Shown here in pieces: positions 3,866-60,187 of a stretch of DNA of 64,000 nucleotides. Source of the stretch: Euprymna scolopes (Eukaryota); assembly GCA_053919585.1 (NCBI GenBank), contig CM132793.1. One strand, 5' to 3'. The notes below the pieces were generated by a model that worked only from the letters and a program-made list of their open reading frames with translations, was not told the DNA's origin and did not search any database. Position 1 is the first letter of the stretch, and each line of letters starts with the position of its first letter. The translations under genes and the position numbers were made by a program.

Positions 3866-4808
3866 ATGAAAACCGAAATTATCGACCATGTCATGGCAGT
3901 TCCAGAAATCCAGCAGAGGAGGTGGACCTTCGCTACTTTCGGGGAGTTACTCGGAAGTAATGAATTAGAAGCTGCAGCAGCATTGGGCCTTATAGGCAAC
4001 ACAAGCCACTGTGAACAGTGCAATAGGGTGAGGGTCCTGCACAAAAGATCCAATAATTCGGATGGGTTTGTTTGGAATTGCGTACGACCCTGCAGGTCCT
4101 CAGCCAGTGTGAGGAAAGGATCTTTTTTTTGAAAAAAGCCGCCTACCACTTAGAAAATTATTAAATTTGTTATTCTGGTGGAGCATGGGAATGCCCCAGT
4201 GCCAAATAATGGAGGAGGTCCAGGTATCTGAACACACAATTGTAGATTGGATGTCGTTCATCCGTGAGGTGTGTGAGAAAAACCTGTACGACAATCCAAT
4301 GCTACTTGGTGGCATAGACGACCAAACACAGATTCCCAAAGAAGTTGAGATTGATGAGTCTCTGTTCTTCCGCCGAAAATACAACAGAGGGCGCGTGAAG
4401 AATGGAATATGGGTATTTGCGGCCGTGGAGCGAGGAAGTAATAAGTGTAACCTGATAGATGTTGAAAAAAGGGACAGCCAGACGCTAATCCCAATAATAA
4501 GATCCTGGATTTTGCCAGGGACGAGGATTCTAAGCGACGGATGGGCGGCATATGATAGTCTGCCACCAATTTACCTTCCCAATAAGGTAATCCATCAGCA
4601 ATATTTTGTTAACCCAGCGGACCCCTCAATCCACACACAAACCGTTGAGGGGTTTTGGTATCAAATAAAAAAACGACTGAGGAGATCAGCAACGACTGAT
4701 AACTTGTTCCATTCGCATCTGATGGAAGAGTTATGGAGACGTCGTGGAAAAGGACATGTTTTCCAATGTATATTATTATGTATACGAGAACAGTATATTG
4801 TTTCATAA
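3866..4808 (+). CDS. Merlin/IS1595 DDE transposase with one +1 frameshift in a T run
   Basis: N-terminal CxxC...WNC..PC, EIDESLFFRRKYNRGR, WVFAAVER, ILSDGWAAY, HTQTVEGFW. Removing one T in the run at about 4123-4130 joins ORFs 3866 and 4167 through SFFEKSRLPLRKLL. Confidence 0.88.
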
Positions 4809-6915: not shown

Positions 6916-8530
6916 TTGGCACGGTAAAATAAAAGTTAAATTTTGTCTAATAAATTCTAAAAAAGGGATTAAATTAAAGAAAATAAAGTATATTATGTAT
7001 TTTTAACTGGCCTTTCCGATGCAGCAATCGGATTTTAGAAAAAATAAATAACAAAGGAACAACAAACATAATTGCAAAAAACCCTTGTTCAAAATTATTG
7101 GCACGGCTTTGTTTTTCTTTTAGTATCAGTATAATATCAATCAATTTCCGGTTTACGTGCTTTCTGAACTTTTTTCTAGCCATATTATGCTTGTTTAACG
7201 CTAATTCAGTGAATAATTTTTTTCAGATAATTTTTAGATAGCGATTTATTTAAACTATTATAAGTGACTAAATTATAATTTTCAATCGCCATGGTTAAAA
7301 CTAAGGAACACAGCGAAGACGTCAGGAAGCTTGTTGTAGCATGCCATACCAATGGGGAGGGCTATGATAAGATTTCAAAGAAGCTAAACCTTCCCAAATC
7401 CACTGTTAGAGCCATAATAAACAAGTTCAAATCGCAAGGCCACGTTATGAGTTTAGAGGGTAGAGGGAGAAAAAGGATTCTTTCCCCAAGAGATGAACGG
7501 AAAATTGTTCGACAAGTAAAACAAAACCCAAGGATCTCTGTTGGGGAGATTGTTGATGAACAGAGCACCTCTGGAGTGAATGTATCTCGACATACAGTTG
7601 GTAGAGTTTTGAAGAGAGCTGGTTTAAAAGCATGTCGTCCGAGAAAGACTCCCTTATTGAAGCCTATGCACCTGAAAGCAAGGCTAGCCTTTGCAAAACG
7701 TCATATTGATAAAGATGTTGCATTCTGGAAACGTGTTCTATGGACTGACGAAACGAAAATAGAGTTATTTGGCCATACTAAAGTGTCTTATATTTACAGA
7801 AAATCTGGCGAAGCTTTCCTGCCTAAGAACACCATACCCACAGTGAAGCACGGTGGAGGCAGTTTGATGTTTTGGGGATCCTTTGCTGCCTCTGGACATG
7901 GGCGACTTGTTAAGGTCACAGGTAGCATAAAAAAGGAAGATTATGTTAAAATATTGGATGAAAACCTGAAAGACTCTGCTAAAGAGCTCTCACTTGGTCG
8001 TCGTTGGTGGTTCATGCAAGATAATGACCCAAAGCATTCGGCTAAACTGACTAAGAAATGGCTTGAGGACAATCATATTAATGTTTTGGAGTGGCCATCA
8101 CAAAGCCCAGACCTTAATCCAATTGAAAATTTATGGAGAACATTAAAATTGAGGGTAATGCAAAGGAAGACTAAGAATCTTATTCAATTGGAGGATTATT
8201 GTCAGGAAGAGTGGGCTAAAATTACTACTGAAGAGTGCAACAACTTGGTTGTAAACTATGAAAAGCGACTGAGGAAGGTAATCAAGGCCAAAGGCTATAC
8301 AATTGATTATTAAATAAATCGTGCCAATAATTTTGAACAAGGGTTTTTTGCAGTTATGTTTGTTGTTCCTTTGTTATTTATTTTTTCTAAAATCCAATTG
8401 CTGCATCGGAAAGGCCAGTTAAAAATACATAATATACTTTGTTATTTTCTTTAATTTAATCCCTTTTTTAGAATTTATTAGACAAAATTTAACTTTTATT
8501 TTACCGTGCCAATAAATATGATCATCACTG
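6916..8530 (+). mobile_element. Tc1 transposon with ~210-bp IR/DR-type TIRs; left tip lies in the gap
   Basis: 6916-7105 is the near-perfect reverse complement of about 8320-8512. Right end CACTG followed by a TA run. TTGGCACG is repeated at the inner and outer ends of the TIR. Confidence 0.93.
7291..8313 (+). CDS. Intact Tc1 DD34E transposase, 340 aa
   Basis: Paired-like HTH, GRGRKR, WTDETK, VKHGGGS, QDNDPKH, WPSQSPDLNPIENLW. 34 residues counted between the second D and the E. Confidence 0.95.
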   Translation: MVKTKEHSEDVRKLVVACHTNGEGYDKISKKLNLPKSTVRAIINKFKSQGHVMSLEGRGRKRILSPRDERKIVRQVKQNPRISVGEIVDEQSTSGVNVSRHTVGRVLKRAGLKACRPRKTPLLKPMHLKARLAFAKRHIDKDVAFWKRVLWTDETKIELFGHTKVSYIYRKSGEAFLPKNTIPTVKHGGGSLMFWGSFAASGHGRLVKVTGSIKKEDYVKILDENLKDSAKELSLGRRWWFMQDNDPKHSAKLTKKWLEDNHINVLEWPSQSPDLNPIENLWRTLKLRVMQRKTKNLIQLEDYCQEEWAKITTEECNNLVVNYEKRLRKVIKAKGYTIDY

Positions 8531-8569: not shown

Positions 8570-10620
8570 ATCCAGTTACCATAAAAAGTCAATCCACAAA
8601 CAAGATTTTTTTTATATTCATTTATTTGTTTTATTTATTTAGTTATCTTTTAATATCTAAGCGAATTTTTATATTAAATTTGTGTCTTGCATGTGTTTCA
8701 TTATGTTTATAGCCGATGCTGCCATAACACAAATTATCAGACAGATAGATATTAAACACAATCACACATAAGTGGATGGAATAAAAAAGTTAAAAACAGG
8801 TTGCTTCAAGCATGGGAAAATGTAAGTTAGGGAAACTCAAAGACATTACTTATAAATGATATCCGACAAAAGATAAGTACACTTAATAACACAGGAAAAA
8901 TATTCAACAGCACCATCATATACATATATACACATGCATGTGCACATGTGTGAAAATACCAGTAGTTTTTAAGATTCTATGATAATAAAAGATTGATTTT
9001 CTGTAGATTTTTCTGTATTTAACTTTGAACAATTTCAATTTAAAAATTTATCAGTTAAAATTGAATTCCTATTTAAACTAAAATTTGTAATAAAAAGATT
9101 TTTCTTAATTTTCTAATTTTAATTTAAATCATTTTCTTTTCTTAGCTAATATTTCACGGCGCACAGTATGGAATTGATGCCAGAAAACACAGAAACATTG
9201 TTTCAATATTCACCAATGAGTATTGACTTTTGTGAAATGAACAATGACGACCATAATGAGAATGAATGTACAGAATTTAATGATCCTGACAGAGAAATCT
9301 TGTTTGGTCCCCTTAATGAATTCGATGACAACGATGATGATAATGATGGCGATGATGGCAATGATGTTGTTAATGAATTTGATGATGATGACGATGTTAT
9401 TGTTATTGATGATGATGACAAGAATGATGATAACGAACTTATTGGTTAAAATTGAAATCCTCTTAACTAATATTTGTAATAAAAGATTTTTCTTTATTTT
9501 CTAATTTTAATCATTTTTTAATTTTCTTTTCTAGCTAATATTTTATACAAAACTGAAACCGGTGCACAGTATGAAATTGATTCCATAAAACAAAACTGAA
9601 ATAAATATTTCAATATTCACCAATGAGTATTGACTTTTGTGAAATCAACAACGACCATAATGATAACAAATGTACAGAATTTAATGACCATGACAGAAAT
9701 CTTGTTTGGTCCCCTTAATGAATTCCATGATGATAATGTTATTGATGATGATTCACACGGTGTAAAATTTAGTTCAGAAGAAAATATTGATGTTTATGAA
9801 ATCAGAGACGATGATAATGATGACGACGACCAACTTAATGCCAGGCAATGGATTTGCTTTTATACTGTCCATACTGCCTGAGTAGATTGAATGCCATATC
9901 TGTTCTTAGACAGACTGTCCGATTTGTGGTATATCATCTATCAATTTATTAATAGAGAAAAACTTTTCATTCACGAATGCGGACAATTAAAAGGGAGATA
10001 ATCAAATGTTCACAATTATCTGACTGTTTTCGAAAACCTTTTCTTAGATGGCTTTTCTTTCATAGCGAAAACATTTTCCTTTTTATTGAAATTCGAATTG
10101 ATTTAAAAACAGACTGATCTTACACCCAACAGTATTAGAATGGCAATCTGGATAATCAGAGCTCTGGTGAAAACCAAGAAGCATTTGATTGGTAACTGGC
10201 AGTTTTAGACCATCTTGTCCCTGCATCTGCAGATAATCTGAGGCAAACAAGTCATTCTCCCAATAAAGATATACTTGCTAATAAATTGACTAGCTCCATG
10301 GATACTCAATACTCATGCTCATCTTACAACATACAATGAATCTTGGTATGGTGTTCATAAAAACTAACATGATTGCTGCTCCAGTGATGCGAGTATCAAA
10401 TCAGCAAACTGGGATGATTGTGAAATATGGAAAGATATTTTGGAAGATCAAGAACAACATCGATTGATGCAGAAAGAAATCCAATTTATCCTTCTCCAAA
10501 TACATCAACATAGCCTGCCTCTCAAGAGTCAGATTTCCCGATACGGACTGTCAGAAAATAAAAGTCCCTTATTTGGTGCCCAAAAGCGATGGATGCTCCA
10601 AGGACAGTAAGGATGGACTT
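8570..10620 (+). pseudogene. Decayed paralog of the 3' part (intron plus acidic exon, tandemly duplicated) of the ZnF-acidic gene
   Basis: 8570-9150 is an inverted homolog of about 54520-55180. Two acceptor-led exon copies (TTAG/CTAATATT at ~9145, CTAG/CTAATATT at ~9534) encode ETLFQYSPMSIDFCE...REILFGPLNEF plus Asp tracts. Degenerate YCPYC and CPIC pieces at ~9865-9985. Stops and frameshifts are present. Confidence 0.7.
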
Positions 10621-21124: not shown

Positions 21125-22570
21125 ACATTTCTCTTCACAAATGTTTTTCATTTTCAAATGAAATGAAAAAAAAAAATAGTTGTATGATTTAACCCATAGA
21201 TGTGCAGAATAAGAGGATTTTTGTACATATGATATCCAGATAATGTAGGCTAAACTTGCTAGTAATATAATTTAAAAACATAAAAACAAGCCATATTTCA
21301 AAATGGGTCGGATTCACAAGCAATAGAAGACTAACAACATTGAAAATTTTAAACGTAAAAAAAAATAAAAACCTCAGTTGAAATGTTATCCATTATATTT
21401 GTTGTTGTTTTTTTTTTTTTTATTTAAAATGGTCACTTTTCAGTTCTACCAAAAAAAGTGGAAAAACAAAATTTAAAACAAAATTTAAAACAAAAACTTA
21501 CCTTCATTAGTAAAAGGCATTTCACAGATTTCACAAGTGTAACTGGTCAAATTGTGTTTGGAGATCTGTCTGTTTACAACAGATTTAAGAGATTGTGTAT
21601 GGACAATAAGGACAGTGATGCCAAACTGGATGGTTTGATGGCATCATGTCCATCTTAGAATGTTTTAATTGAAGATGTTTAAGTAAATTCTTTTTCCAAA
21701 AATGGCATTTGGCACTGGTTACATCCAAAACGGCTGATATGCTTCAAAAGGTGTCGGTCAAACATAAGTTTATGGTCAGTTTGTAGTCGCATAAAGAACA
21801 AGTCTGAACTGGTACATTTGTGTTTTGTTAATATTTCGGATTGTGATTAACAAGGAAATCATCTTGGAAAGACGTAGAAAAAAAAAAAAAGAACTAAAAT
21901 TTGGCAAAGGCAGTTTATCTTTGCGTTGTAAAACAATTTTGGGATTGCTTTTTTTTCCATTTGAAATCAAAATAGATTTTTCTTTTGACGAATATTTTAA
22001 ATTAATTCTCAGGTTTTGCCTTTGGAAGGCGCCATCGAAAAAGAATTTGAATGGCAATGACTCGTGAGCATCACGGATTGCTTTGTAATGGAATATTTTT
22101 GAACACCACAAACATGGATAGTTGCCCCGTAGTTTTGAAGAGATCCTTTTTCAGGTTTGAAGAAACAGTTTTAGTCCCCACAAATGAATGCTGGTCCATA
22201 TTTTTCATATGAGAAATTATATTTTCTACTAACCGAGACTTTTGAAATTGTTGCCTTCTTGCAATGGAGTTTCTTAATCATGACAAACATCAAATTAGTT
22301 CTTCTAGTGTTGGTAGGATTCTGCAATGGATCTGCAGGATTTTTAAAAGATAATTGTAAGATTTATGATAATTCAATCTTTGCATCACAAATAAGGGAGG
22401 AAGCACTTCAAATAGGAGAGAAATCAATCCACGTACAAAAGAAATCGTTTGCCTTTTGACAAATCTTGAGTCTTTACATTGGAAATCAAAACAGAAATCG
22501 TTTTTCAGTTTTCTTGTTATTAGATTCACAACCATCTATCCATGAAAAGGGCGTTCTGCATCCAATTCTA
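21125..22570 (-). pseudogene. C2H2 zinc-finger pseudo-exon paralogous to exon 1 of the 53969-57872 gene
   Basis: Minus translation across frameshifts gives CLWCSKIFHYKAIRDAHE, CSLCDYK.DHKLMFDRHLLKH, CNQCQMPFLEK..LLKHLQLKH, CPYCPY..LKSVVNRQISKH and CEICEMPFTNE, then a GTAAGT donor at 21501. Intron 21125-21500 resembles 57225-57583. Confidence 0.78.
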
Positions 22571-38904: not shown

Positions 38905-41817
38905 ATGACGACAGTACAATCTAAAAATAAGCTTAAACCAGGATTAGGGACAAACAAATTCAACTTGCCTCCTCCCTTGAGGCTCTCATTCACAAATATC
39001 CGTGGGCTTAGAACTAACTTAGCTGATGTTGAAGCATTTCTCTTAACAAATACCCCGGATATCTTAGCACTAAGTGAGACTAACCTACACTCCTCCATTC
39101 CCTCTAACCACTTTAACATGCCTGGATATCTCCCACTCTGCCGTAAGGACTCTGACAGACATATGCACGGACTTGGAGTTTACATTCGTAATACCCTTCC
39201 CTTGACTAGAGAAACAAACCTAGAAACAGATGATCAAGCCTTTATGTGCTTTAGACTAAACGTGCAACACAGTATTAGCTACTATTATTTTCTCTACCGC
39301 TCTCCCTCGACTCAGGACTGCTCCATAATAAACAAAGTATCTGACAGCATAGACACGGCACTGTCCCTCGACACTAGCGCACAAATACATGTGTTTGGTG
39401 ACTTTAATGTCCACCACAAAAACTGGCTTGGATTCTCTACTCACACAGATGCAGCGGGCAGCACAACCCATAGCTTCGCTATATCTCACTCCCTATCACA
39501 AATTGTTACGTTTCCAACCCGTTTCCCTGACCAGGAAGAACAACACGCATCACTTCTAGATCTGTTTTTGACCACAGTTCCCGATGACTGCATAACGAAG
39601 GTCCACAGCCCACTCGGGAACGCTGACCATGCAGTGATAATGGTTGAAATCGCCCTAAACTCTAGACCCAAAACTGAAGAGCCAGTGCTCAAAACAACGA
39701 GATATTATAATAAGGCTGACTGGGAAGCCATCAGGGAACTAATTAGAGATGCTCCATGGAAAAATATTTTCTCTCTCCCTGCTGAACAATGTGCAAACGA
39801 GACCACTGACTGGTTCAAAACTGCAATCGAAGCGCATGTTCACATGCGGAAATTTTATAGTAAGCCCCACTCTCCCCAATGGTTTACGTCGACTTGTGCA
39901 ACTGCCATTACTCAAAAGCAGCATGCATACCGTAGGTTTAACCGACATAAGTCCAGTTCAAACAGACTGAAATATATAGAAGCTAGAAATAACGTTAAGA
40001 AAGAAATAGCGACAGCTAAGAGAGAATTTACGGAAACCACTAAAAAGCGCATCGAAGCACAAAAACTAGGAACTCGAGACTTCTGGAAAATCTACAACAG
40101 TGTAGTAAATAATGGGCAATCAACAATTCCCCCACTAACCAACAATCACGAGGTTGTCTCCTCAGCAACCGACAAGGCTAACATGCTTGCCAGTCGGTTT
40201 GCCTCAAACTCCACACTGGACCCTTCCAACCACCCCCTACCTGACTTTCCTATGCGGACAGACGCCACACTAGACGATCTGAAAACCACCCCTGCTCAGG
40301 TGCATGCTATCATAAAAAACCTTGACACCTCAAAAGCATGTGGACCCGATCTTATCCCAGCTGTGCTATTAAAAAAGTGCTCAGCCGAAGTAGCTCCAGT
40401 TCTCTCCAAACTCTACAACAAATGTCTTAATGAAGCTTGCTTTCCGGGCTGTTGGAAAACTGCTTCTGTTGTACCAGTATTCAAGAATTCTGGCGAAAGG
40501 ACAGACCCATCAAATTATCGCCCCATTAGCCTCCTCCCACTTTTTGCCAAAATATTTGAGACCATAATTAACCATGCTCTAGTCCATCATCTTACAGATG
40601 CTAAACTACTGACTGACAAACAATATGGATTTAGACAAGCCCGTTCCACAGCAGACATCCTCACTGTGATCTCTGAACGTATATACCAATCACTGGACAA
40701 AGCGGGGGAAGGCAGAGCGGTAGCTCTAGATATATCTAAGGCTTTTGACAGGGTATGGCATGAGGGTCTCCTCAGTAAAATCAGATCATACGGTATCACT
40801 GGTAGAATACTTAACATAATTAAATCCTTCTTAGATAAGAGAAAAATCCAGGTAGTCCTTGACGGTCGCACATCTAAACAATATGATATAAATGCGGGAG
40901 TGCCCCAGGGTTCTATCCTTGGACCTCTATTGTTCCTGATATTCATAAATGACCTCCCCGACAACATTGCCTCTGAGATGGGTATATATGCTGATGACAC
41001 TACACTCTATGGCAGACACGACAGGAAGACGAATGAACACATTTCTAAAGAAATGGCAGAAACACTAGAGGAAGACCTCCAATCTGTAGTGGAATGGGGA
41101 CAAAAGTGGTTGGTCGCATTCAATGCTGCCAAGACTAAACTAGTTTCATTCAATAATTACAAGAAACCCTCTCTACCACCCATAGCAATGGCCAACGACT
41201 CTTTATCTGAGAGTCCATCTTTCAAACTCCTTGGCCTAACGTTCACAGGAAACATGAGTTGGAACAATTACATTGAAGGCATTGCCAGGGCCGCTGCAAG
41301 AAAGGTAGGCTCTCTCTACCGTGCTAGAAAACTACTAACACCCGAAAGTATCCTGTACCTCTATAAGGCCACCATGCGCCCATGTATGGAGTATTGCTGC
41401 CACATCTGGGCTGGTGCATCTGCTACTAGTCTCTCGCTCCTTGACAAGGTTCAAAAGAGAGTCGCAAACCTGATAGGCCCTGAACTGGCATCTAAGCTTC
41501 AGCCTCTGTCCCATCGACGAAATGTTGCATCCCTCTGCCTTTTCTACAAGTATTTTAGTGGTGAATGCTCTGACGAACTGCAATCACTTGTGCCCCCACG
41601 ACGCGAGCACCCTCGACAAACCCGACAGGCTACTAGATCCCACCCCCACACTGTAGAGGTCCCTAGATGTAAAAGATCTTTTTACTCCAATAGTTTCTTC
41701 CCCAGAACCGCAAGACTCTGGAATTCCATTCCAGGTCCCTGCTTCCCCAACAGTACTGACGTGCAGAAGTTCAAGTGTAACGTGAACCGACACCTTGCTG
41801 CCCAAATCCCTACATAG
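38905..41817 (+). CDS. Intact LINE ORF2: APE endonuclease plus reverse transcriptase, 970 aa
   Basis: NIRGL, LSET, YRSP, GDFNVH, LDLFLT and DH (APE). YRPISLL, LDISKAFDRV, GVPQGSILGPLLF and YADD (RT). No stops. Confidence 0.95.
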   Translation: MTTVQSKNKLKPGLGTNKFNLPPPLRLSFTNIRGLRTNLADVEAFLLTNTPDILALSETNLHSSIPSNHFNMPGYLPLCRKDSDRHMHGLGVYIRNTLPLTRETNLETDDQAFMCFRLNVQHSISYYYFLYRSPSTQDCSIINKVSDSIDTALSLDTSAQIHVFGDFNVHHKNWLGFSTHTDAAGSTTHSFAISHSLSQIVTFPTRFPDQEEQHASLLDLFLTTVPDDCITKVHSPLGNADHAVIMVEIALNSRPKTEEPVLKTTRYYNKADWEAIRELIRDAPWKNIFSLPAEQCANETTDWFKTAIEAHVHMRKFYSKPHSPQWFTSTCATAITQKQHAYRRFNRHKSSSNRLKYIEARNNVKKEIATAKREFTETTKKRIEAQKLGTRDFWKIYNSVVNNGQSTIPPLTNNHEVVSSATDKANMLASRFASNSTLDPSNHPLPDFPMRTDATLDDLKTTPAQVHAIIKNLDTSKACGPDLIPAVLLKKCSAEVAPVLSKLYNKCLNEACFPGCWKTASVVPVFKNSGERTDPSNYRPISLLPLFAKIFETIINHALVHHLTDAKLLTDKQYGFRQARSTADILTVISERIYQSLDKAGEGRAVALDISKAFDRVWHEGLLSKIRSYGITGRILNIIKSFLDKRKIQVVLDGRTSKQYDINAGVPQGSILGPLLFLIFINDLPDNIASEMGIYADDTTLYGRHDRKTNEHISKEMAETLEEDLQSVVEWGQKWLVAFNAAKTKLVSFNNYKKPSLPPIAMANDSLSESPSFKLLGLTFTGNMSWNNYIEGIARAAARKVGSLYRARKLLTPESILYLYKATMRPCMEYCCHIWAGASATSLSLLDKVQKRVANLIGPELASKLQPLSHRRNVASLCLFYKYFSGECSDELQSLVPPRREHPRQTRQATRSHPHTVEVPRCKRSFYSNSFFPRTARLWNSIPGPCFPNSTDVQKFKCNVNRHLAAQIPT

Positions 41818-52545: not shown

Positions 52546-53161
52546 TTTACATGAAAAATAAATTTTGGTCGCAAAAATTGGGGAAACAATCGTGAAAATC
52601 TGAACAAGTCGGTCACTTTACACTTGTTTACAGAGACCATGTGCGTCTGCAAAGTTCAAGGTCAAATCAATGTCGATTGAAATCTGTCTTTATTTCCTTC
52701 TTTGACTCGCGTCGTTTGGGGTCCTTATTCCATTCTTTGGTTCAAAATAAAATAAAAATGATTATTCCTAAAGTATCTCCGTTTAGAATTCTTCAATTAC
52801 AATATTTTCGTTCTTTCTTAGGATAAATAATAAAATTCAATATAATTCTTTGATAAAAATTTACTCTAGACTTCTTTTTGTTTTTTTTGTTTTTTTAAAT
52901 TCCAGGTGATTAATGTTCAATTTCTGAAATAAAAAATTGCCTTTCACAAATGAGAATATCTACAGAAAGAAAAACTTTGACTCATAAAACCAGGTGAAAA
53001 AATAAATAAAATAAAATTAAAAAAAAAAAGTAACCAAAATAGAAATACATTTTATTAAAAATAACAAATTTTATTTAACAATTGATATTTTTACAAAGAG
53101 ATTAAAAGAAAAAGAAGAATGATTAAAAAAAAGTCTTGAGTTTTCAATAATACATTCAACA

Positions 53162-53500
53162 TTTTTATGTAATGTCTGTTAATATGTGAGTTTTGAGCAA
53201 TGGTTTTATGTAATATCTGTTAATGTGTGAATTTTGAGCAATGATTTTATTTGACGCCTGTTAATGTGTGAGTTTTGAGAAATGGTTTTTATTTGACGTC
53301 TGTTAATGTGTGAATTTTGAGAAATGGTTTTTATTTGACATCTGGTAATGTGTGAGTTTTGAGCAATGTTTTTATTTGACGTATGTTAATGTGTGAATGT
53401 TGAGAAATGGTTTTTATTTGACGTCTGTTAATGTGTGAATTTTGAGCAATAGTTTTATTTGACATCTATTAATGTGTGACTTTTGAGTAATGGTTTTTGA
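53162..53500. repeat. Minisatellite, about 8 units of 40-41 bp
   Basis: Unit approximately TTTATTTGACGTCTGTTAATGTGTGAATTTTGAGAAATGGT, head to tail with no spacers. Confidence 0.9.
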
Positions 53501-53968
53501 AGTGACATCCAAGAAGTAAAACACTTACAGGCGTTTTCTGTGATTACAATGGAAATAAAAATGGAAATTTAAAAAATATCCTTGAATTTTGTAATTATAC
53601 TAGAATTAACTTTTAGTTTTAAAATTAATTTTCCATCTGATAATTAATCTTCTATATGCTGAATGAATTCTAAATATAATAATCAGTTATTTTTACTTAC
53701 AGAAACATTCAATTTTACTGAATAACAAAATTTATGTGAAAATAATGAAATTTGATTTTTAAATCAACTCTGATGATAATAATAGAACAAAATGATTTCT
53801 TTAGAGAGAGACAAAAATCCATCCTTAGCAACGACACCATAACTCAGGACTAATGAGAAAAAGAAGAAAGAAAGAGAATTTTTCTGTAGCAAAGAAATGT
53901 CCTCTGTTAACAAAAAAAAAAATGTTAACAAAAGAAAACAGAACAAGTAACTAAATAAGATTTCACTT

Positions 53969-54353
53969 TCAGATGACGTCGTCATAATCAAACTCGTCAA
54001 GAGGACCAAATAGTATCTCTCTGTCAGAGAAGCAGGCATCATTTTCGCCGTCTTTGTCATCGTCGCCATCATCATCATCATCATAGTCACTTATTTCACA
54101 AAAATCAAAGTTGATTGGTGAATGTGTGAAAAATTCTTCATTCATGATTTGTAGCCCTAATTCGATGCTGTATGAATGTTCAAGGTTCGTATGAATGGAA
54201 CTGAATTCTTCACCGTGTGAATCATCATCATCAACAACATCAACGTCATCACTGTCATTATCATCATCGAATTCATCAAGGGGGCCAAATGATATTTCTC
54301 TGTCAATGAAACAGATGCCATCATCATTATTAAATTTTGTACAGTGTGAATTC

Positions 54354-54393
<40 letters not shown>

Positions 54394-55203
54394 TGTCGTT
54401 TATTTCACAAAAGTCTATACTCATTGATGAATACTGAAATAATGTTTCGGTTTTATTTTCTGGTATCAATTTCATACTGTGCGCATGTTCCAATTTTGTA
54501 TGAATGGAAATATTGGCTAGAAAAACAAAAAAGAAAAAAAATAATTATTTAAATTAAAATAAGAAAAATGAAGAAAAATCTTTTTAATGAAAATTTAGCT
54601 AGAAATTCAATATTAACTGAGAAATTCTAAAATTAACACGAATTTCGGTAAAAAAAAAAATTAAAAGCTTTCAAAGTTAATTAAAACAATCTGCAGAAAA
54701 TAAATCTGTTATTATCGTAGAATCTTACTTTATTCAACTTGCATGACATTCTTGTTTATGAATGGACAACATTTTCAGCAAAAACTACTGATATTTTTAC
54801 ACACGCGCACATGCATGTGTATATATACATGATGTTGAATATTTTTCATGCGTTATTAAGTGTACTTATCTTTTATGGATATCTTTTGTCAGATATCATT
54901 TATTAGTGTCTTCGAATGTCTGTAAATTGTGTTTTTGCTTGCTTGAACCTTTCTTTCTTCTTTTATATTCCACTCAATTATGCCTATAATATATATCTGT
55001 CTCTGATTTGTGTTATGAAAGCCTCGGCTGTATACTCAATGAAACATGTGTAAGACACATATAAAGTAAAAATCCGCCTATATATTAAAAAAAATAACTA
55101 AATAAATAAAAGAAATAAATGAATATAAAAAAATAAAAAAGCATGTTTGTGGATTGACTTTATGTGGTAATTGGAATATAAAATTAAAGCACACACACAC
55201 ACT

Positions 55204-55242
<39 letters not shown>

Positions 55243-55894
55243 GAAATAAAATGGAGGTGAAAGGACTTGAATACTCAACGTTTCACCCAATTTATGCGGG
55301 CTTTTGTCAATGATAATCCCTCTTGAAAAAGCCTGCATAAATCGGGTGAAATATTGAGTATTCAGGTCCTTTCACCTCCATTTTATTTCATATCGTTGGN
55401 NNNNNNNNNNNNNNNNNNNNNNNNNNNNNNNNNNNNNNNNNNNNNNNNNNNNNNNNNNNNNNNNNNNNNNNNNNNNNNNNNNNNNNNNNNNNNNNNNNNN
55501 NNNNNNNNNNNNNNNNNNNNNNNNNNNNNNNNNNNNNNNNNNNNNNNNNNNNNGTCCTCATAAGGAATCATCAGGCTAAGATGCATGGAATTCGTGTAAC
55601 CTGCTCTTTCTATATATAAACGTAGTGTTTAGGTCAGCTAACAAATCAGGTTTATTATGATTTAAAGTTTTAATAAGGTTAAAGTTTTCATTAGTCAAAA
55701 GTAATTACTATCTAGTTGTACTCATCTATTAAACAGTGTTGAAGTAAATATTGAAAATTGATACGTAAAATGCTACCTCTTGTCACAACAGTTAAAGGGA
55801 ACACATGAAATAATATGTGTTGATTCTGAATTATTGGAACTGATATAAAAGAAAAAGTGTAATGTATTTTTCTGAAACTATTCTTTCTCTCTCT

Positions 55895-55966
<72 letters not shown>

Positions 55967-56161
55967 GGTGTGTGTTATAACAAAAAAGGTTGATGGTTAT
56001 AACTGAAGCATTTTTGTCATATTAATGATTTCTTAGCATTAAACATTAACAGAAAACATTAAACACGTTCGTTACAGCATGCTGTTATGATTGAATATAT
56101 AAAGACCGTGTTCGTGTGTTCCTATGCCAAAGAGTTACAATCTTTGTACGTAGGAAAGTAG

Positions 56162-56247
<86 letters not shown>

Positions 56248-57872
56248 CGTGGCTTTGTAGAGATATATGATACTCTCAGATGTGAGTAATTTCCTAGCAT
56301 GGTAGAAAGAGATAACTTTCTTCTCAGCAATGTCTTCAATTTACTTGTTCTAATTCATGTTGCTTGCGAATGTTAAGCTGAGGAGTTTGGACAATGAGCT
56401 TTCAGGTAGCATATTATCAGTCATGGCAATTTATGGGTGAGAAGGTTTCTTGTAATTGTTAAAAGGAAAGAAGTTAATCTTGGCAGTATTGATTATTACC
56501 GTCCATTTACATCCCCATTTCATTACAAAGTGAAGATTTTTCTCTAAGACTGCTGTCACGAAGAGGTCATTTATGAATATCAGGAGAAATAAATAAATAA
56601 ATAAATTTTTATATTTTCAGAATATTTTTTATGAATAACTGAGGTGATTTTTTTTTTCAAAATCATGACGATATGACTAAACGTTGACATAACTTTAAAA
56701 AATTTTTTTTTTTTTTTAATAAATGATTTCTTTATCGAAGACACGCATGTCCAAAAGAATGGAAGAGAAATAACTCCTGAAATCTCTATTCGAATTATTT
56801 CCAGGAAAAAAAAATCAAAGATCAGAAGAAAGAAAAAAAAAGAAAAGAAAATTGTCCCAGAAAAAATAGAATGAAATTGTGAAAATGTTAATTATAGGAG
56901 AAAAAAAAAACTTGCAGCCATGCATAATACAAGAAATGAACCTTTATAGTACGTAAATAAATATATATATGTCCACTGGCCAAATTATGTTTGAAAATAT
57001 GTCTGTTCATGACATATTCACATTTAAAGGATGATTTGTATGTATAACATGAAAAATAAAGACACAATATTAACAACACAAATGTTTATAAAATGATTTT
57101 AAGGAAAAGAAAAACCTGTCTCCATTACATTAATGCAAATAAATATTTTTTTAAAATGGTCTAGTAAAAAGTTGGTTATTTTAGTTAATGGCATATCAAC
57201 TTTTATTGCCATTTAAGTTTGGAATTGTTTTATCTAAACAAATGATATTCTTTTGCAAATGAACTATTAGAAAAAAATAATTGTACTATTTAATCCATAA
57301 ATGTGCAGAATGAGGGGATGCATGTCTCACTCCAAAATTATTTTATACATATTTGATACCCAAGCAACATTGACGAAATTTGCTGGCAATATTAATAAAA
57401 ATAAAAAAAGGCCACATTTCAAATCAAATGAATCAGATTCAGTAACACTAAACTGACAATATTGAAAATTTTAAATAGTATACAAGAAAATAAATTGAAA
57501 TGGTATCCATTATTTTTTAAATGGCCACTTTTCTATTCAACCAAATAATCAAAAGGAATATTGAGTTTAAAACAAAAGCTTACCTTTATTAATAAAAGGC
57601 ATTTGACAAATGTCACAAGTGTGACTGGCCAAATTATGTTTGAAAATATGTCTGTTCATGACGGATTTAAAGGATGACTTGTATGGACAATGGGGACACT
57701 GTCGGCATTGAAATGTATTTTTAAGCTTGGATATTTTTGAAAGTTTTCCTGGTGTCAAGATGGACGTTCGTTTGTGGTGATATTTCCGTTTGTGGTAAAT
57801 AACATTTCCCATTGTCATAAATGGCTTCTTGCAAAAGTTGCAGGAAAAAGAATACTTGATGTTTTTCACCAT
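53969..57872 (-). CDS. Two-exon C2H2 zinc-finger protein (3 fingers) with Asp-rich repeat tail, 278 aa; exons 57872-57584 and 54516-53969
   Basis: Phase-1 GT-AG intron 57583-54517 (AAAG|GTAAGC ... TTTTTCTAG|CC). Splicing rebuilds CDIC-QMPFINKANISI-HTKLEH (CX2CX12HX4H). Total 837 nt in frame. Additional upstream exons are possible. Confidence 0.8.
55191..56244. repeat. Intronic microsatellites: (CA)n 55191-55230, (CA)n 55896-55959, (TG)n(AG)n 56163-56244
   Basis: Directly visible. Confidence 0.95.
55239..55393. repeat. ~155-bp hairpin resembling an inverted Penelope-type terminal repeat
   Basis: Arms of about 70 bp. Each strand reads TTGA.AAA-GCC...GGGT-GAAA-(C/T)(G/A)TTGAG. Confidence 0.6.
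56270..56586 (-). mobile_element. Old CR1-group fragment related to the 38905 subfamily
   Basis: CCTGATATTCATAAATGACCTC and AACAATTACAAGAAACC are shared with 40936-41170. Confidence 0.7.
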
Positions 57873-60187
57873 CTTTTTCTTCTTTCAAGCAAAAAAGTTA
57901 AATGATTTTGTAAATAGAATTAAAATTGTTTATAATTTTCGAACCAAAATATTTCAGTTAAAAATGAATTTTTTTTTAAATTAGAAATTCTGTGAAAGAA
58001 AAATGAACTGTTGGTGAAAGATTTAGGAGGGATCAAAGCCCGACCTTTTTGTGATAAAGTCTATTTCAAGAAGTTGTCAACAAAGACGTTGACTCACTGC
58101 TTGCTTATAAACTTTGAACCAGAAATAAATGATCAAACCAAAGTTATATTCTTTTAAAATAAATGTGGAATTGGACTTTAGACTTTAAACTTCAGTATCA
58201 TATTTCACTGAATGACAATAACATTGAGGTCAATGAGGCTACACACAACATGATCAAAACACCACTCCCACAAAATGTGAAATTCTAACCAAACAGATGT
58301 TTCTAAATTACTGATTAATTACTAAATAAGAAAATGTTTATATACAATGAGATTAAGTAGAGAAGCATGTACAAATATTTTCAATGGCGAAAAAAGTTTT
58401 AACTTCATAAAAATGACTTCTTTTTTTTCTAAAAATAATATAAATAATTGAAAAACAGTCTTCTACAATTGTGTTCAACTTAAAATCAAGAGTTAATTCG
58501 AGTGATGAATCCTGAATCACTAGTAGATTCGATTCTGTCAAATGAAAATATAAGTTGACTTAAAGGAGAAACGAAAAATTATATTTTCACATTTCGTTTA
58601 AATGGATGTTTTTTATTCATGTTCAACACAAAGAAGGCATATTCATCAGAGCACATTCCATTAAAACACTTGTAAAACTGGCACAGCTGTATTATGGCTT
58701 TTAATACATGACTCAAGAAGCAGCACATATGATGGGTGACGATTAATTACCAAGTAGACCTAGTATAGATTTTAACACAATATTGGCACTGTTAATTATA
58801 AATAACAGATAATATATACAGCAATAAGAAAGTAATAANNNNNNNNNNNNNNNNNNNNNNNNNNNNNNNNNNNNNNNNNNNNNNNNNNNNNNNNNNNNNN
58901 NNNNNNNNNNNNNNNNNNNNNNNNNNNNNNNNNNNNNNNNNNNNNNNNNNNNNNNNNNNNNNNNNNNNNNNNNNNNATCTAACAATCAACTGGTATGGAA
59001 ATCTGTGATTATAATTTTTACAAAATATTATTGGCCTTATTATTCTATAAGTACTATCCCACCTAAATAAAAAAAATTGCTCGATATACAAGAGAGAGCA
59101 AATAAATAAAATTTTAGTCATTCAATGAATTTAAAAAATTATGACGTGAAATGTTTAAATTTCAAATCAAAAGATTTTTATTATTCTATGTAAGACAAAG
59201 AATACATTTGAAATACTATAACTCCTAATCCTATAGGATTCCGATGTCTACCATCTCTTCAGAGGAGAAAATATTAGCAAATAGTTATAATGGTTTACAC
59301 CTTATTTGCTAAAGTCAGTGAGACATGGAAAATCACAATTAAAAGTTGTTTAAGTATTTAAATGTCATAGAGTAAGGGAAGTTAATGAAAAGGATATAAA
59401 AATTCACATCCAAATTGCATGGTAAAATCCGAAGTGAATGTCTTTGATGGCAGTTTGGTAATTGATCCCAACTGTATTTTGAGTAATCCACATCACAAGG
59501 TAATGGTTCAAAGAGCTTCAAATTCCACTCCAAAATAACTTCAAATTGTTAATAAAATAAAAATTAAATCGCTTTCAGTAGACAGGCCACGCAAATTAAG
59601 ACAAACTGAACTGATAAGAAAAATGAGAAATGAAAAAAGAAAAAATTTAAATTAAAAAAAGTAAAATATTAAAAAATGAAAAACTAAAAATAAAATGAAA
59701 ACTGAAAAGGATAAAAATAAATGAACAAATAAATAAATAAATAAAATAAAATAATAAAATAAAGTAAAAAAGACAAGAAAAGAAAATGCTTACGTGTAAT
59801 AAAATAGCGAATATAAGAGAAGATAAGATAAAATAAAATAAAGGGGAAGGGAAGGAAATAGATTAAGGAATAGGGAGAGATAGAAAATAGAAAAACGAAA
59901 ATAATAATGAAGAAAGAAATAGAGAGGGGAGAAAGAGAGAGAGAGAGAGAGAGAGAAATAGGAACTAAGAAGACGAAGTCAATAAACCTTTATAAAATAA
60001 AGTGACAGGCCGTGAAAATAGGTCAGAATGCGAAAGTAAGTCTAGACATATGCAAGAAAGAAAAAGAAAGCAAATAAAAAATCATGCATGTCAAGTAGAA
60101 ATTCCCGCTTAAATAAATTTAAATCAAATCAACTCAAAATAATCTTATCTAATATATACAGTACAATTCTTGCTAATTTTATAACGA

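What the first reader, a model, noticed from the sequence alone, without database searches (positions are those of the whole stretch)
53969..57872. Hidden spliced gene: three C2H2 fingers fused to an Asp-rich tail with a repeated DREIxFGPLxEF motif
Seen: two ORFs that look unrelated join through a canonical 3067-bp phase-1 intron, which restores a perfect CX2CX12HX4H finger. The tail has two copies of a unit: SIHTxLEH half-finger, F..SP/SM..DFCEI, Asp run, C, DREI(L/S)FGPLDEF. The hydrophobic motifs are conserved in all four copies in the window while the Asp runs vary in length. Known: clustered, fast-turnover C2H2 genes with lineage-specific effector domains (KRAB, ZAD) often sit in TE-rich regions. 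Inference: the motif is an effector or cofactor-docking module I do not recognise, in a lineage-specific ZnF family, with an acidic activator or DNA/histone-mimic role.
Basis: partly seen in the sequence, partly recalled or inferred. Interest (0 to 1): 0.75.

Follow-up and report, generated by a model that had tools for sequence, protein, structure and literature searches.

The report
Expressed zinc-finger gene with acidic tail
This mollusc genome holds a real, expressed two-exon gene for a small three-finger C2H2 zinc-finger protein with a very acidic tail carrying a repeated motif that matched nothing in the libraries searched; it is most likely an ordinary lineage-specific transcription factor, and the tail's role is untested.

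Summary
On the minus strand, exon 1 (57872-57584) and exon 2 (54516-53969) join across a GT..AG phase-1 intron. The join completes a third canonical C2H2 finger. RNA contigs from two runs of two studies, one of them an oligo-dT RNA-seq library, skip exactly 57583-54517, so the splice is real. The assembly gap (55400-55553) lies inside the intron and does not touch the reading frame; only the 3067-nt intron length is nominal.

The product is 278 aa: a basic finger head (net +18) and a hyperacidic tail (net -56). The tail has two homologous units (BLASTP E 9e-16). Between the units, silent sites are saturated (pS about 0.8) while amino acids are kept (pN about 0.25, Fisher p 1e-6 or lower), so the motifs have been under protein-level constraint.

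The two further copies at 9146-9860 are frame-broken pseudogene pieces. A four-finger exon-1 pseudogene lies at 21800-21502.

Neither exon has relatives in Pfam (beyond zf-C2H2), PDB, the ESM Atlas, the word search or a profile search of 1.84 billion proteins.

The role of the tail is inferred, not shown. Acidic activation or cofactor docking is the most likely. It is a new member of a known kind, of moderate interest.

The parts
57584..57872 (-). Coding part of exon 1 (96 codons plus the first base of codon 97): finger 1, a long basic linker, finger 2 and the first half of finger 3. The 5' UTR reaches at least 57955.
   Evidence: Sequence and ORF; Pfam zf-C2H2; RNA contigs X2 record 5 (57955-57580) and X3 record 17.
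57777..57842 (-). Finger 1, C-X2-C-X12-H-X4-H
   Evidence: Pattern scan; Pfam zf-C2H2_4 stretch at residues 9-32.
57636..57698 (-). Finger 2, C-X2-C-X12-H-X3-H, of the CPxCPY type
   Evidence: Pattern scan; Pfam zf-C2H2 stretch at residues 58-79; nearest solved fingers are ZFAT, ZBTB10 and BCL11A.
54517..57583 (-). Intron, GT..AG, phase 1, nominal 3067 nt. It holds the assembly gap 55400-55553, CA/GA microsatellites, TE pieces, a 155-nt hairpin and a 68-nt copy of finger-2 coding sequence.
   Evidence: Sequence; RNA joint in X1 and X2; repeats.
53969..54516 (-). Coding part of exon 2 (181 codons plus stop): second half of finger 3 and the acidic tail. The 3' UTR runs to about 53739.
   Evidence: Sequence; RNA contigs at 54512-54405 and 54344-53739.
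54485..54516 (-). Second half of finger 3 (the two His). With 57617-57584 it completes C-X2-C-X12-H-X4-H.
   Evidence: Read across the RNA-supported junction.
54209..54514 (-). Tail unit 1: half finger, FQYSSMSIDFCEI, Asp run, CFIDREISFGPLDEF, acidic spacer
53972..54208 (-). Tail unit 2: relic half finger without Cys, FTHSPINFDFCEI, Asp run, CFSDREILFGPLDEF, C-terminus
54354..54393 (-). Perfect (GAT)13 microsatellite that encodes the Asp run of unit 1
   Evidence: Tandem Repeats Finder, 100% matches; RNA contigs break here.
9146..9860 (+). Decayed paralogue of exon 2: two tandem copies of unit 1, each with its own intron 3' flank and AG, followed by a truncated unit-2-like end. Frames are broken by a 19-nt deletion, one stop and two frameshifts.
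   Evidence: exon identity equals intron identity.
21502..21800 (-). Decayed paralogue of exon 1: four fingers with three frameshifts. It has the same G|GTAAG donor splitting the last finger, followed by homologous intron sequence down to 21128.

Best explanation
Shown: a transcribed, correctly spliced two-exon gene encodes a 278-aa protein. The N-terminal 110 residues are three canonical C2H2 fingers and are strongly basic. The C-terminal 170 residues are a hyperacidic tail, probably disordered. The tail was built by an old internal duplication of a unit of about 90 aa, and pure GAT microsatellites within it make Asp runs of variable length. The gene is the only intact member of a small local family; the other copies in the window have decayed.

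Inferred: the fingers bind nucleic acid, most likely a short DNA site read by the closely linked fingers 2 and 3. The tail is the effector part. Its two conserved hydrophobic motifs per unit (xxDFCEI and CFxDREIxFGPLDEF), held exposed by the surrounding Asp and Glu, act as short docking peptides for a co-regulator. That is how acidic activation domains work.
For: - Splice and expression: the joint 54516/57584 is seen in RNA contigs of X1 and X2. Exon contigs are also present in X3 and X4, which are oligo-dT or polyA libraries. Together the four runs come from three studies.
- Fingers: sequence patterns and Pfam, and similarity to solved fingers.
- Charge: head net +18 over 96 aa, tail net -56 over 181 aa.
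- Internal repeat: BLASTP E 9e-16.
- Constraint between units: pS 0.75-0.82 against pN 0.22-0.29, Fisher p from 1e-6 to 8e-13. In the 15-codon FGPL motif, 7 codons differ silently and only 2 change the residue.
- Intactness: the gene has no lesion in 278 codons, while both paralogous loci carry three or more lesions each at about 15-20% divergence.
- Activation-domain rule: 21 of 143 39-aa tiles of the tail pass the published acidic activation-domain rule, equation 1 of PMC10550315.
Against: - No functional data exist.
- The activation-domain rule is passed by composition alone; shuffles pass as often.
- Since the split from the paralogues, exon and intron identities are equal (0.86/0.85, 0.81/0.79, 0.83/0.84). 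Recent constraint on this copy is therefore not demonstrated; the stretches are short and the test is weak.
- Of six coding differences among runs, four change the residue, although some may come from a paralogue.
- AlphaFold from a single sequence says nothing either way (pLDDT 37 and 43).
- With only three fingers and a non-canonical first linker, RNA or protein binding is not excluded.
Confidence: 0.55

Rival explanations
1. The acidic tail works within the molecule or on chromatin, not as an activator. It folds back on the basic fingers as a DNA mimic and gates DNA binding, as the acidic tail of HMGB1 does (from my own knowledge), or it binds histones.
For: There is an extreme charge dipole, +18 head and -56 tail. 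There are long pure Asp runs. Acidic patches on transcription factors are discussed as affecting target search in PMC10550315.
Against: A pure mimic would need charge only. Yet the conserved parts are the hydrophobic motifs, while the Asp runs vary in length and come from microsatellites.
Confidence: 0.2
2. A young orphan on its way out: it is still transcribed and spliced, but the tail no longer has a role. The motif similarity then only records constraint in the ancestor of the family.
For: - Two of the three family loci in the window are dead.
- Exon and intron identities between gene and paralogues are equal.
- No relative was found in any library.
- Non-synonymous differences occur among runs.
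Against: - The 278-codon frame is intact in DNA of 29% G+C, where the paralogues have acquired three or more lesions each.
- Splice sites are conserved and used.
- The gene is expressed in several studies.
- There is a strong deficit of amino-acid change between the units.
Confidence: 0.17
3. The gene belongs to, or was captured by, a transposable element, which would explain several partial copies in different orientations within a TE-rich region.
For: The family pieces lie on both strands among Tc1/mariner, IS1595-like, LINE and LTR elements.
Against: - No terminal inverted repeats flank the gene.
- Neither exon matches a transposase or any TE protein family.
- The copies share intron sequence, as segmental DNA duplicates do.
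Confidence: 0.05

Closest known systems
KRAB-, ZAD- and FiNZ-type zinc-finger gene families: lineage-specific non-finger module plus C2H2 fingers (KRAB and FiNZ are discussed in PMC10547256; ZAD is from my own knowledge)
   Same: C2H2 fingers are joined to a module restricted to one lineage. The paralogues are clustered in TE-rich DNA, with rapid birth and death of copies.
   Different: - The module is C-terminal, hyperacidic and probably disordered. It is built of short motifs and is not a folded N-terminal domain.
- There are only three fingers, not a long array.
- The family seen here is tiny.
- There is no Pfam match to KRAB, ZAD, SCAN or BTB.
Acidic transcriptional activation domains of the VP16 H1 / CITED2 type (acidic exposure model, PMC10550315, PMC9241528)
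   Same: Strong net negative charge with interspersed F, L and Y. 21 tiles pass the published rule. Disorder is likely.
   Different: This is a functional class without a sequence family, and activity was not tested here. Activation domains are usually poorly conserved, whereas here two motifs of 12-15 residues are kept almost unchanged between old duplicates. The Asp runs are far longer than is typical.
YY1/Pho-type factors: acidic runs plus four C2H2 fingers (from my own knowledge, not tested here)
   Same: A few C2H2 fingers are combined with homopolymeric acidic runs in the effector part.
   Different: In YY1 the acidic part is N-terminal and the fingers are C-terminal. No sequence similarity was found.
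Acidic tail of HMGB1 (from my own knowledge)
   Same: A basic DNA-binding head is followed by a long Asp/Glu tail on one chain.
   Different: The HMGB1 tail is pure Asp/Glu without conserved hydrophobic motifs, and its head is made of HMG boxes, not zinc fingers.

Membership tests
Classical C2H2 zinc finger (Pfam PF00096) | C-X2-4-C-X12-H-X3-5-H spacing, with hydrophobic core residues at +4 and +10 after the second Cys | tested here: met
   All three fingers fit. Finger 3 fits only after the splice.
Classical C2H2 zinc finger (Pfam PF00096) | Profile score at or above Pfam's gathering threshold | tested here: met
   Exon 1 alone scores 25.6 bits against a cut-off of 25.2, E 1.5e-5, with two stretches. 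This is only just above threshold.
Classical C2H2 zinc finger (Pfam PF00096) | Beta-beta-alpha fold that binds zinc | tested here: inconclusive
   AlphaFold2 on a single sequence gave pLDDT 43, which is uninformative. Zinc binding cannot be tested with these tools.
KRAB / ZAD / SCAN / BTB zinc-finger subfamilies | Presence of the named effector domain | tested here: not met
   hmmscan against Pfam of both exons at E up to 1 gave no such domain.
Acidic activation domain (functional class) | Composition: 39-aa tiles with net charge -9 or lower, W+F+Y+L of 7 or more, and the diagonal rule of PMC10550315 | tested here: met
   21 of 143 tiles pass, all in unit 2. Shuffled tails pass equally, so this is a statement about composition only.
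Acidic activation domain (functional class) | Activates a reporter when tethered, and binds a coactivator | not testable with these tools
   This needs a GAL4-tether or similar assay.
Transposable-element protein | Similarity to a transposase, integrase, RT or other TE family, or terminal repeats around the gene | tested here: not met
   No family match. No flanking inverted repeats.

The most novel reading that the evidence does not exclude
The bipartite unit (xxDFCEI, Asp run, CFxDREIxFGPLDEF) is a new, mollusc-restricted cofactor-docking module of zinc-finger proteins. It would be a short-motif counterpart of KRAB or ZAD that recruits one specific partner. Since each motif is a hydrophobic strand-like core next to an acidic run, the partner could be a ubiquitin-like protein such as SUMO or Atg8; that resemblance is from memory only and was not tested.
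Probability: 0.25. Interest if true: 0.55.

Novelty: new member of a known kind. Interest (0 to 1): 0.35.

Why it matters
Molluscs, cephalopods above all, have very large zinc-finger gene expansions (PMC12513265, PMC10547256). I found no mention of KRAB-like partner modules for them in the passages of these papers that I searched. A zinc-finger protein with a conserved, repeated docking motif would give a first handle on how such factors act in this phylum.

The gene also appears to be missing from public protein sets. This shows that short finger genes whose last finger is split by an intron escape ORF-based surveys, which often demand five or more fingers in one ORF (PMC10547256).

Beyond that, it is one small orphan gene without functional data.

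Tried and rejected
- Word search of 5.8 billion proteins: exon 2 gave 2386 word-sharing candidates, none at E 0.01 or better. Exon 1 gave no candidate.
- Profile of the four unit copies (A1, 93 positions) against 1.84 billion representatives: 0 hits at E 0.001 or better. In a library of that size a relative that keeps only the two short motifs would score too low, so only fairly close relatives are excluded.
- ESM Atlas by features: no usable hit.
- PDB by sequence, exon 2: nothing credible.
- AlphaFold2 on each exon alone: pLDDT 37 and 43, so no fold search was made.
- Notes of this scan: no other mention of the motifs.
- Rfam over 53000-58800: only sub-threshold matches on the intron hairpin.
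- Asp-rich shell-matrix protein, considered because this is a mollusc: rejected, because the N-terminus is a basic finger head and not a signal peptide.
- Chance ORFs: rejected by the RNA junction.
- I could not search this species' genome or other mollusc genomes for further family members, because no tool here holds them.

Full report
**What is there**

The window is AT-rich animal DNA (35% G+C overall, 28-30% around the locus). It is full of transposable elements: an intact Tc1/mariner transposase ORF, an IS1595-like DDE ORF, reverse transcriptases and an integrase. RNA runs that hold the locus are labelled 'mollusc metagenome' or 'invertebrate metagenome', or belong to one coded organism. 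Earlier notes of the scan also call the genome a mollusc.

**Gene model, read from the sequence**

All features are on the minus strand.
- The ATG is at 57872, with A at -3 and G at +4, and an in-frame TGA five codons upstream.
- Exon 1 ends AAA G|GTAAGC at 57584.
- A long pyrimidine tract and TAG precede exon 2, which starts at 54516.
- The stop TGA is at 53971-53969.
- The intron (57583-54517) is phase 1 and 3067 nt as written.
- The product has 96 + 1 + 181 = 278 codons.
- Finger 1 is C-X2-C-X12-H-X4-H and finger 2 is C-X2-C-X12-H-X3-H; both lie in exon 1.
- Finger 3 has its two Cys and the core Phe in exon 1. Its core Ile and two His are in exon 2, and it reads C-X2-C-X12-H-X4-H only after the join.
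- Pfam recognises zf-C2H2 in exon 1, just above threshold (25.6 against 25.2 bits). It finds nothing in exon 2.
- The nearest solved chains for exon 1 are ordinary fingers of ZFAT, ZBTB10 and BCL11A.

**The gap**

The N run 55400-55553 lies wholly inside the intron. It therefore cannot affect the frame. The RNA evidence below joins the two exons regardless of what the gap holds. Only the intron length is an estimate.

**RNA evidence**

Exon 2 with its 3' flank is held by 20 listed runs from 10 studies. Five of these runs are on record as RNA, from oligo-dT or polyA libraries. I laid four runs on 53600-58100.
- One joint is reported as 'skips 3067, CT..AC (cut +4)', that is 54516 joined to 57584. 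It is the reverse complement of GT..AG, so transcription is from the minus strand.
- This joint is present in X1 and X2, each in a contig with 108 nt on the shorter side.
- X2 record 5 runs 57955-57580 and then 54512-54405 with two mismatches.
- X2 record 4 runs 54344-53739.
- X3 and X4 hold exon 1 and exon 2 contigs as well.
- The mRNA is thus about 1.15 kb, with at least 83 nt of 5' UTR and about 230 nt of 3' UTR.
- No contig crosses the perfect (GAT)13 run at 54354-54393, so the length of the Asp run in the RNA is unread.
- All runs are contigs, so nothing can be said about expression level or exact transcript ends.

**The tail**

Exon 2 translates to a sequence with 46 Asp and 17 Glu in 181 residues (net -56). 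The head has net +18 in 96 residues.

The tail is two homologous units (BLASTP E 9e-16 with composition adjustment, 53% identity). Each unit has four parts:
- a half finger, SIHTxLEH, which in unit 2 is a relic without any Cys;
- a hydrophobic motif ending DFCEI;
- an Asp run;
- the motif CFxDREIxFGPLDEF.

The duplication is old and the protein has been constrained since.
- In a codon alignment the units differ at 75-82% of synonymous sites, which is saturation.
- They differ at only 22-29% of non-synonymous sites (Fisher p 8e-13 over all columns, 1e-6 without the Asp/Asn columns).
- In the 15 codons of the FGPL motif, seven differ silently and two change the residue.

The Asp runs, by contrast, are microsatellite products and differ in length between copies.

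**Relatives in the window**

- At 9146-9860 (+) there are two tandem copies of unit 1, each with its own stretch of intron and an AG acceptor, followed by a truncated unit-2-like end.
- The first of these copies has lost the half finger through a 19-nt deletion that shifts the frame relative to the acceptor.
- The second copy has a stop and two frameshifts.
- At 21800-21502 (-) there is an exon-1 copy with four fingers and three frameshifts. It ends at the same G|GTAAG donor inside its last finger and is followed by homologous intron down to 21128.
- Between the gene and these copies, ungapped identity is the same in exon and intron (0.86/0.85, 0.81/0.79, 0.83/0.84), as expected for pseudogenes.
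- This also means that recent constraint on the intact copy cannot be shown from these short stretches.
- Because the truncated unit-2-like end is present at 9776-9860, the internal duplication predates the split of the gene copies.
- Two RNA contigs point to one more expressed paralogue or allele that uses the same donor.
- X1 record 2 has 10 mismatches in its exon-1 part and then runs on unlike the window. X4 record 26 stops exactly at 57584 with 139 unplaced letters.

**Relatives elsewhere**

None were found. The searches were: word searches with each exon, a profile of the unit copies against 1.84 billion representatives, the ESM Atlas and PDB.

These blanks exclude close relatives only. 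The length window of the word search, the size of the big library and the shortness of the conserved motifs all limit the reach. The libraries evidently lack even this gene's own product. That agrees with 'hidden', meaning it is in no public protein set that I could search. I could not search mollusc genomes.

**How it most likely works**

- Shown: an expressed gene for a basic three-finger head and a hyperacidic tail with two constrained hydrophobic motifs per unit.
- Inferred: fingers 2 and 3, joined by a 7-residue linker of canonical length, read a short DNA site. Finger 1 sits 22 residues away on a basic linker.
- Inferred: the tail is disordered and presents its hydrophobic motifs, kept exposed by the surrounding acid residues, to a co-regulator, which is the logic of acidic activation domains.
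- The published composition rule (charge -9 or lower, W+F+Y+L of 7 or more, plus a diagonal; PMC10550315) is met by 21 of 143 tiles, all in unit 2. Shuffled tails pass as often, so this adds only that the composition fits.
- Rivals: an autoinhibitory or histone-binding acidic tail; a decaying orphan; a TE-borne gene. I rate them 0.20, 0.17 and 0.05.
- What speaks for docking motifs over pure charge is that the hydrophobic motifs are conserved while the Asp runs drift.

**Comparison and verdict**

By membership this is a classical C2H2 zinc-finger protein. It is not a KRAB, ZAD, SCAN or BTB member. By design it resembles lineage-specific finger families with their own effector part, and acidic activators. 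The tail motif is unmatched, but nothing shows that it is more than a pair of short linear motifs in an acidic effector region.

I file it as a new member of a known kind. Interest is 0.35.

Each exon was handled by reference.

Noticed in passing
window 55239-55393 (inside the intron, abutting the gap at 55400): A near-perfect 155-nt hairpin: arms of 67 nt, 93% complementary, RNA fold -102 kcal/mol, z -20. There is only a sub-threshold Rfam match (mir-3202, 43.6 against 90 bits). Very short RNA contigs (31-52 nt) pile up at 55354-55396 at high depth in X2 and X4. It is probably a multi-copy MITE-like element; a source of small RNAs is not excluded.
   Followed up: partly
window 56975-57042 (-), inside the intron: A 68-nt copy (87% identical) of the finger-2 coding stretch of exon 1 (57685-57624). 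It is out of context and has no evident splice sites.
   Followed up: partly
window 57584-57698, RNA contigs X1 record 2 and X4 record 26: Contigs share the exon-1 donor but carry mismatches and continue into sequence unlike this locus. A second expressed paralogue or allele, or an alternative downstream exon, probably exists elsewhere in the genome.
   Followed up: no
window 7291-8313 (+): An uninterrupted 340-aa Tc1/mariner transposase ORF (HTH_Tnp_Tc3_2, Sleeping-Beauty-type HTH, DDE_3). It may be a young or active element, and it sits just upstream of the decayed exon-2 copies.
   Followed up: partly
window 4167-4808 (+): A 213-aa ORF with an ISXO2/IS1595-like DDE transposase domain (E 4e-13) in an animal genome. 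From memory, this fits a Merlin-type DNA transposon.
   Followed up: no
window 53162-53498: A tandem array of a 41/83-nt unit (8 copies, 86% matches) about 250 nt downstream of the end of the RNA contigs of the gene.
   Followed up: no
window 56246-56546 and 41066-41375: A repeated element (70% identical) inside the intron. RNA contigs of three runs match it with a 78-nt replacement at 56364-56443, so they come from other copies of that element.
   Followed up: no
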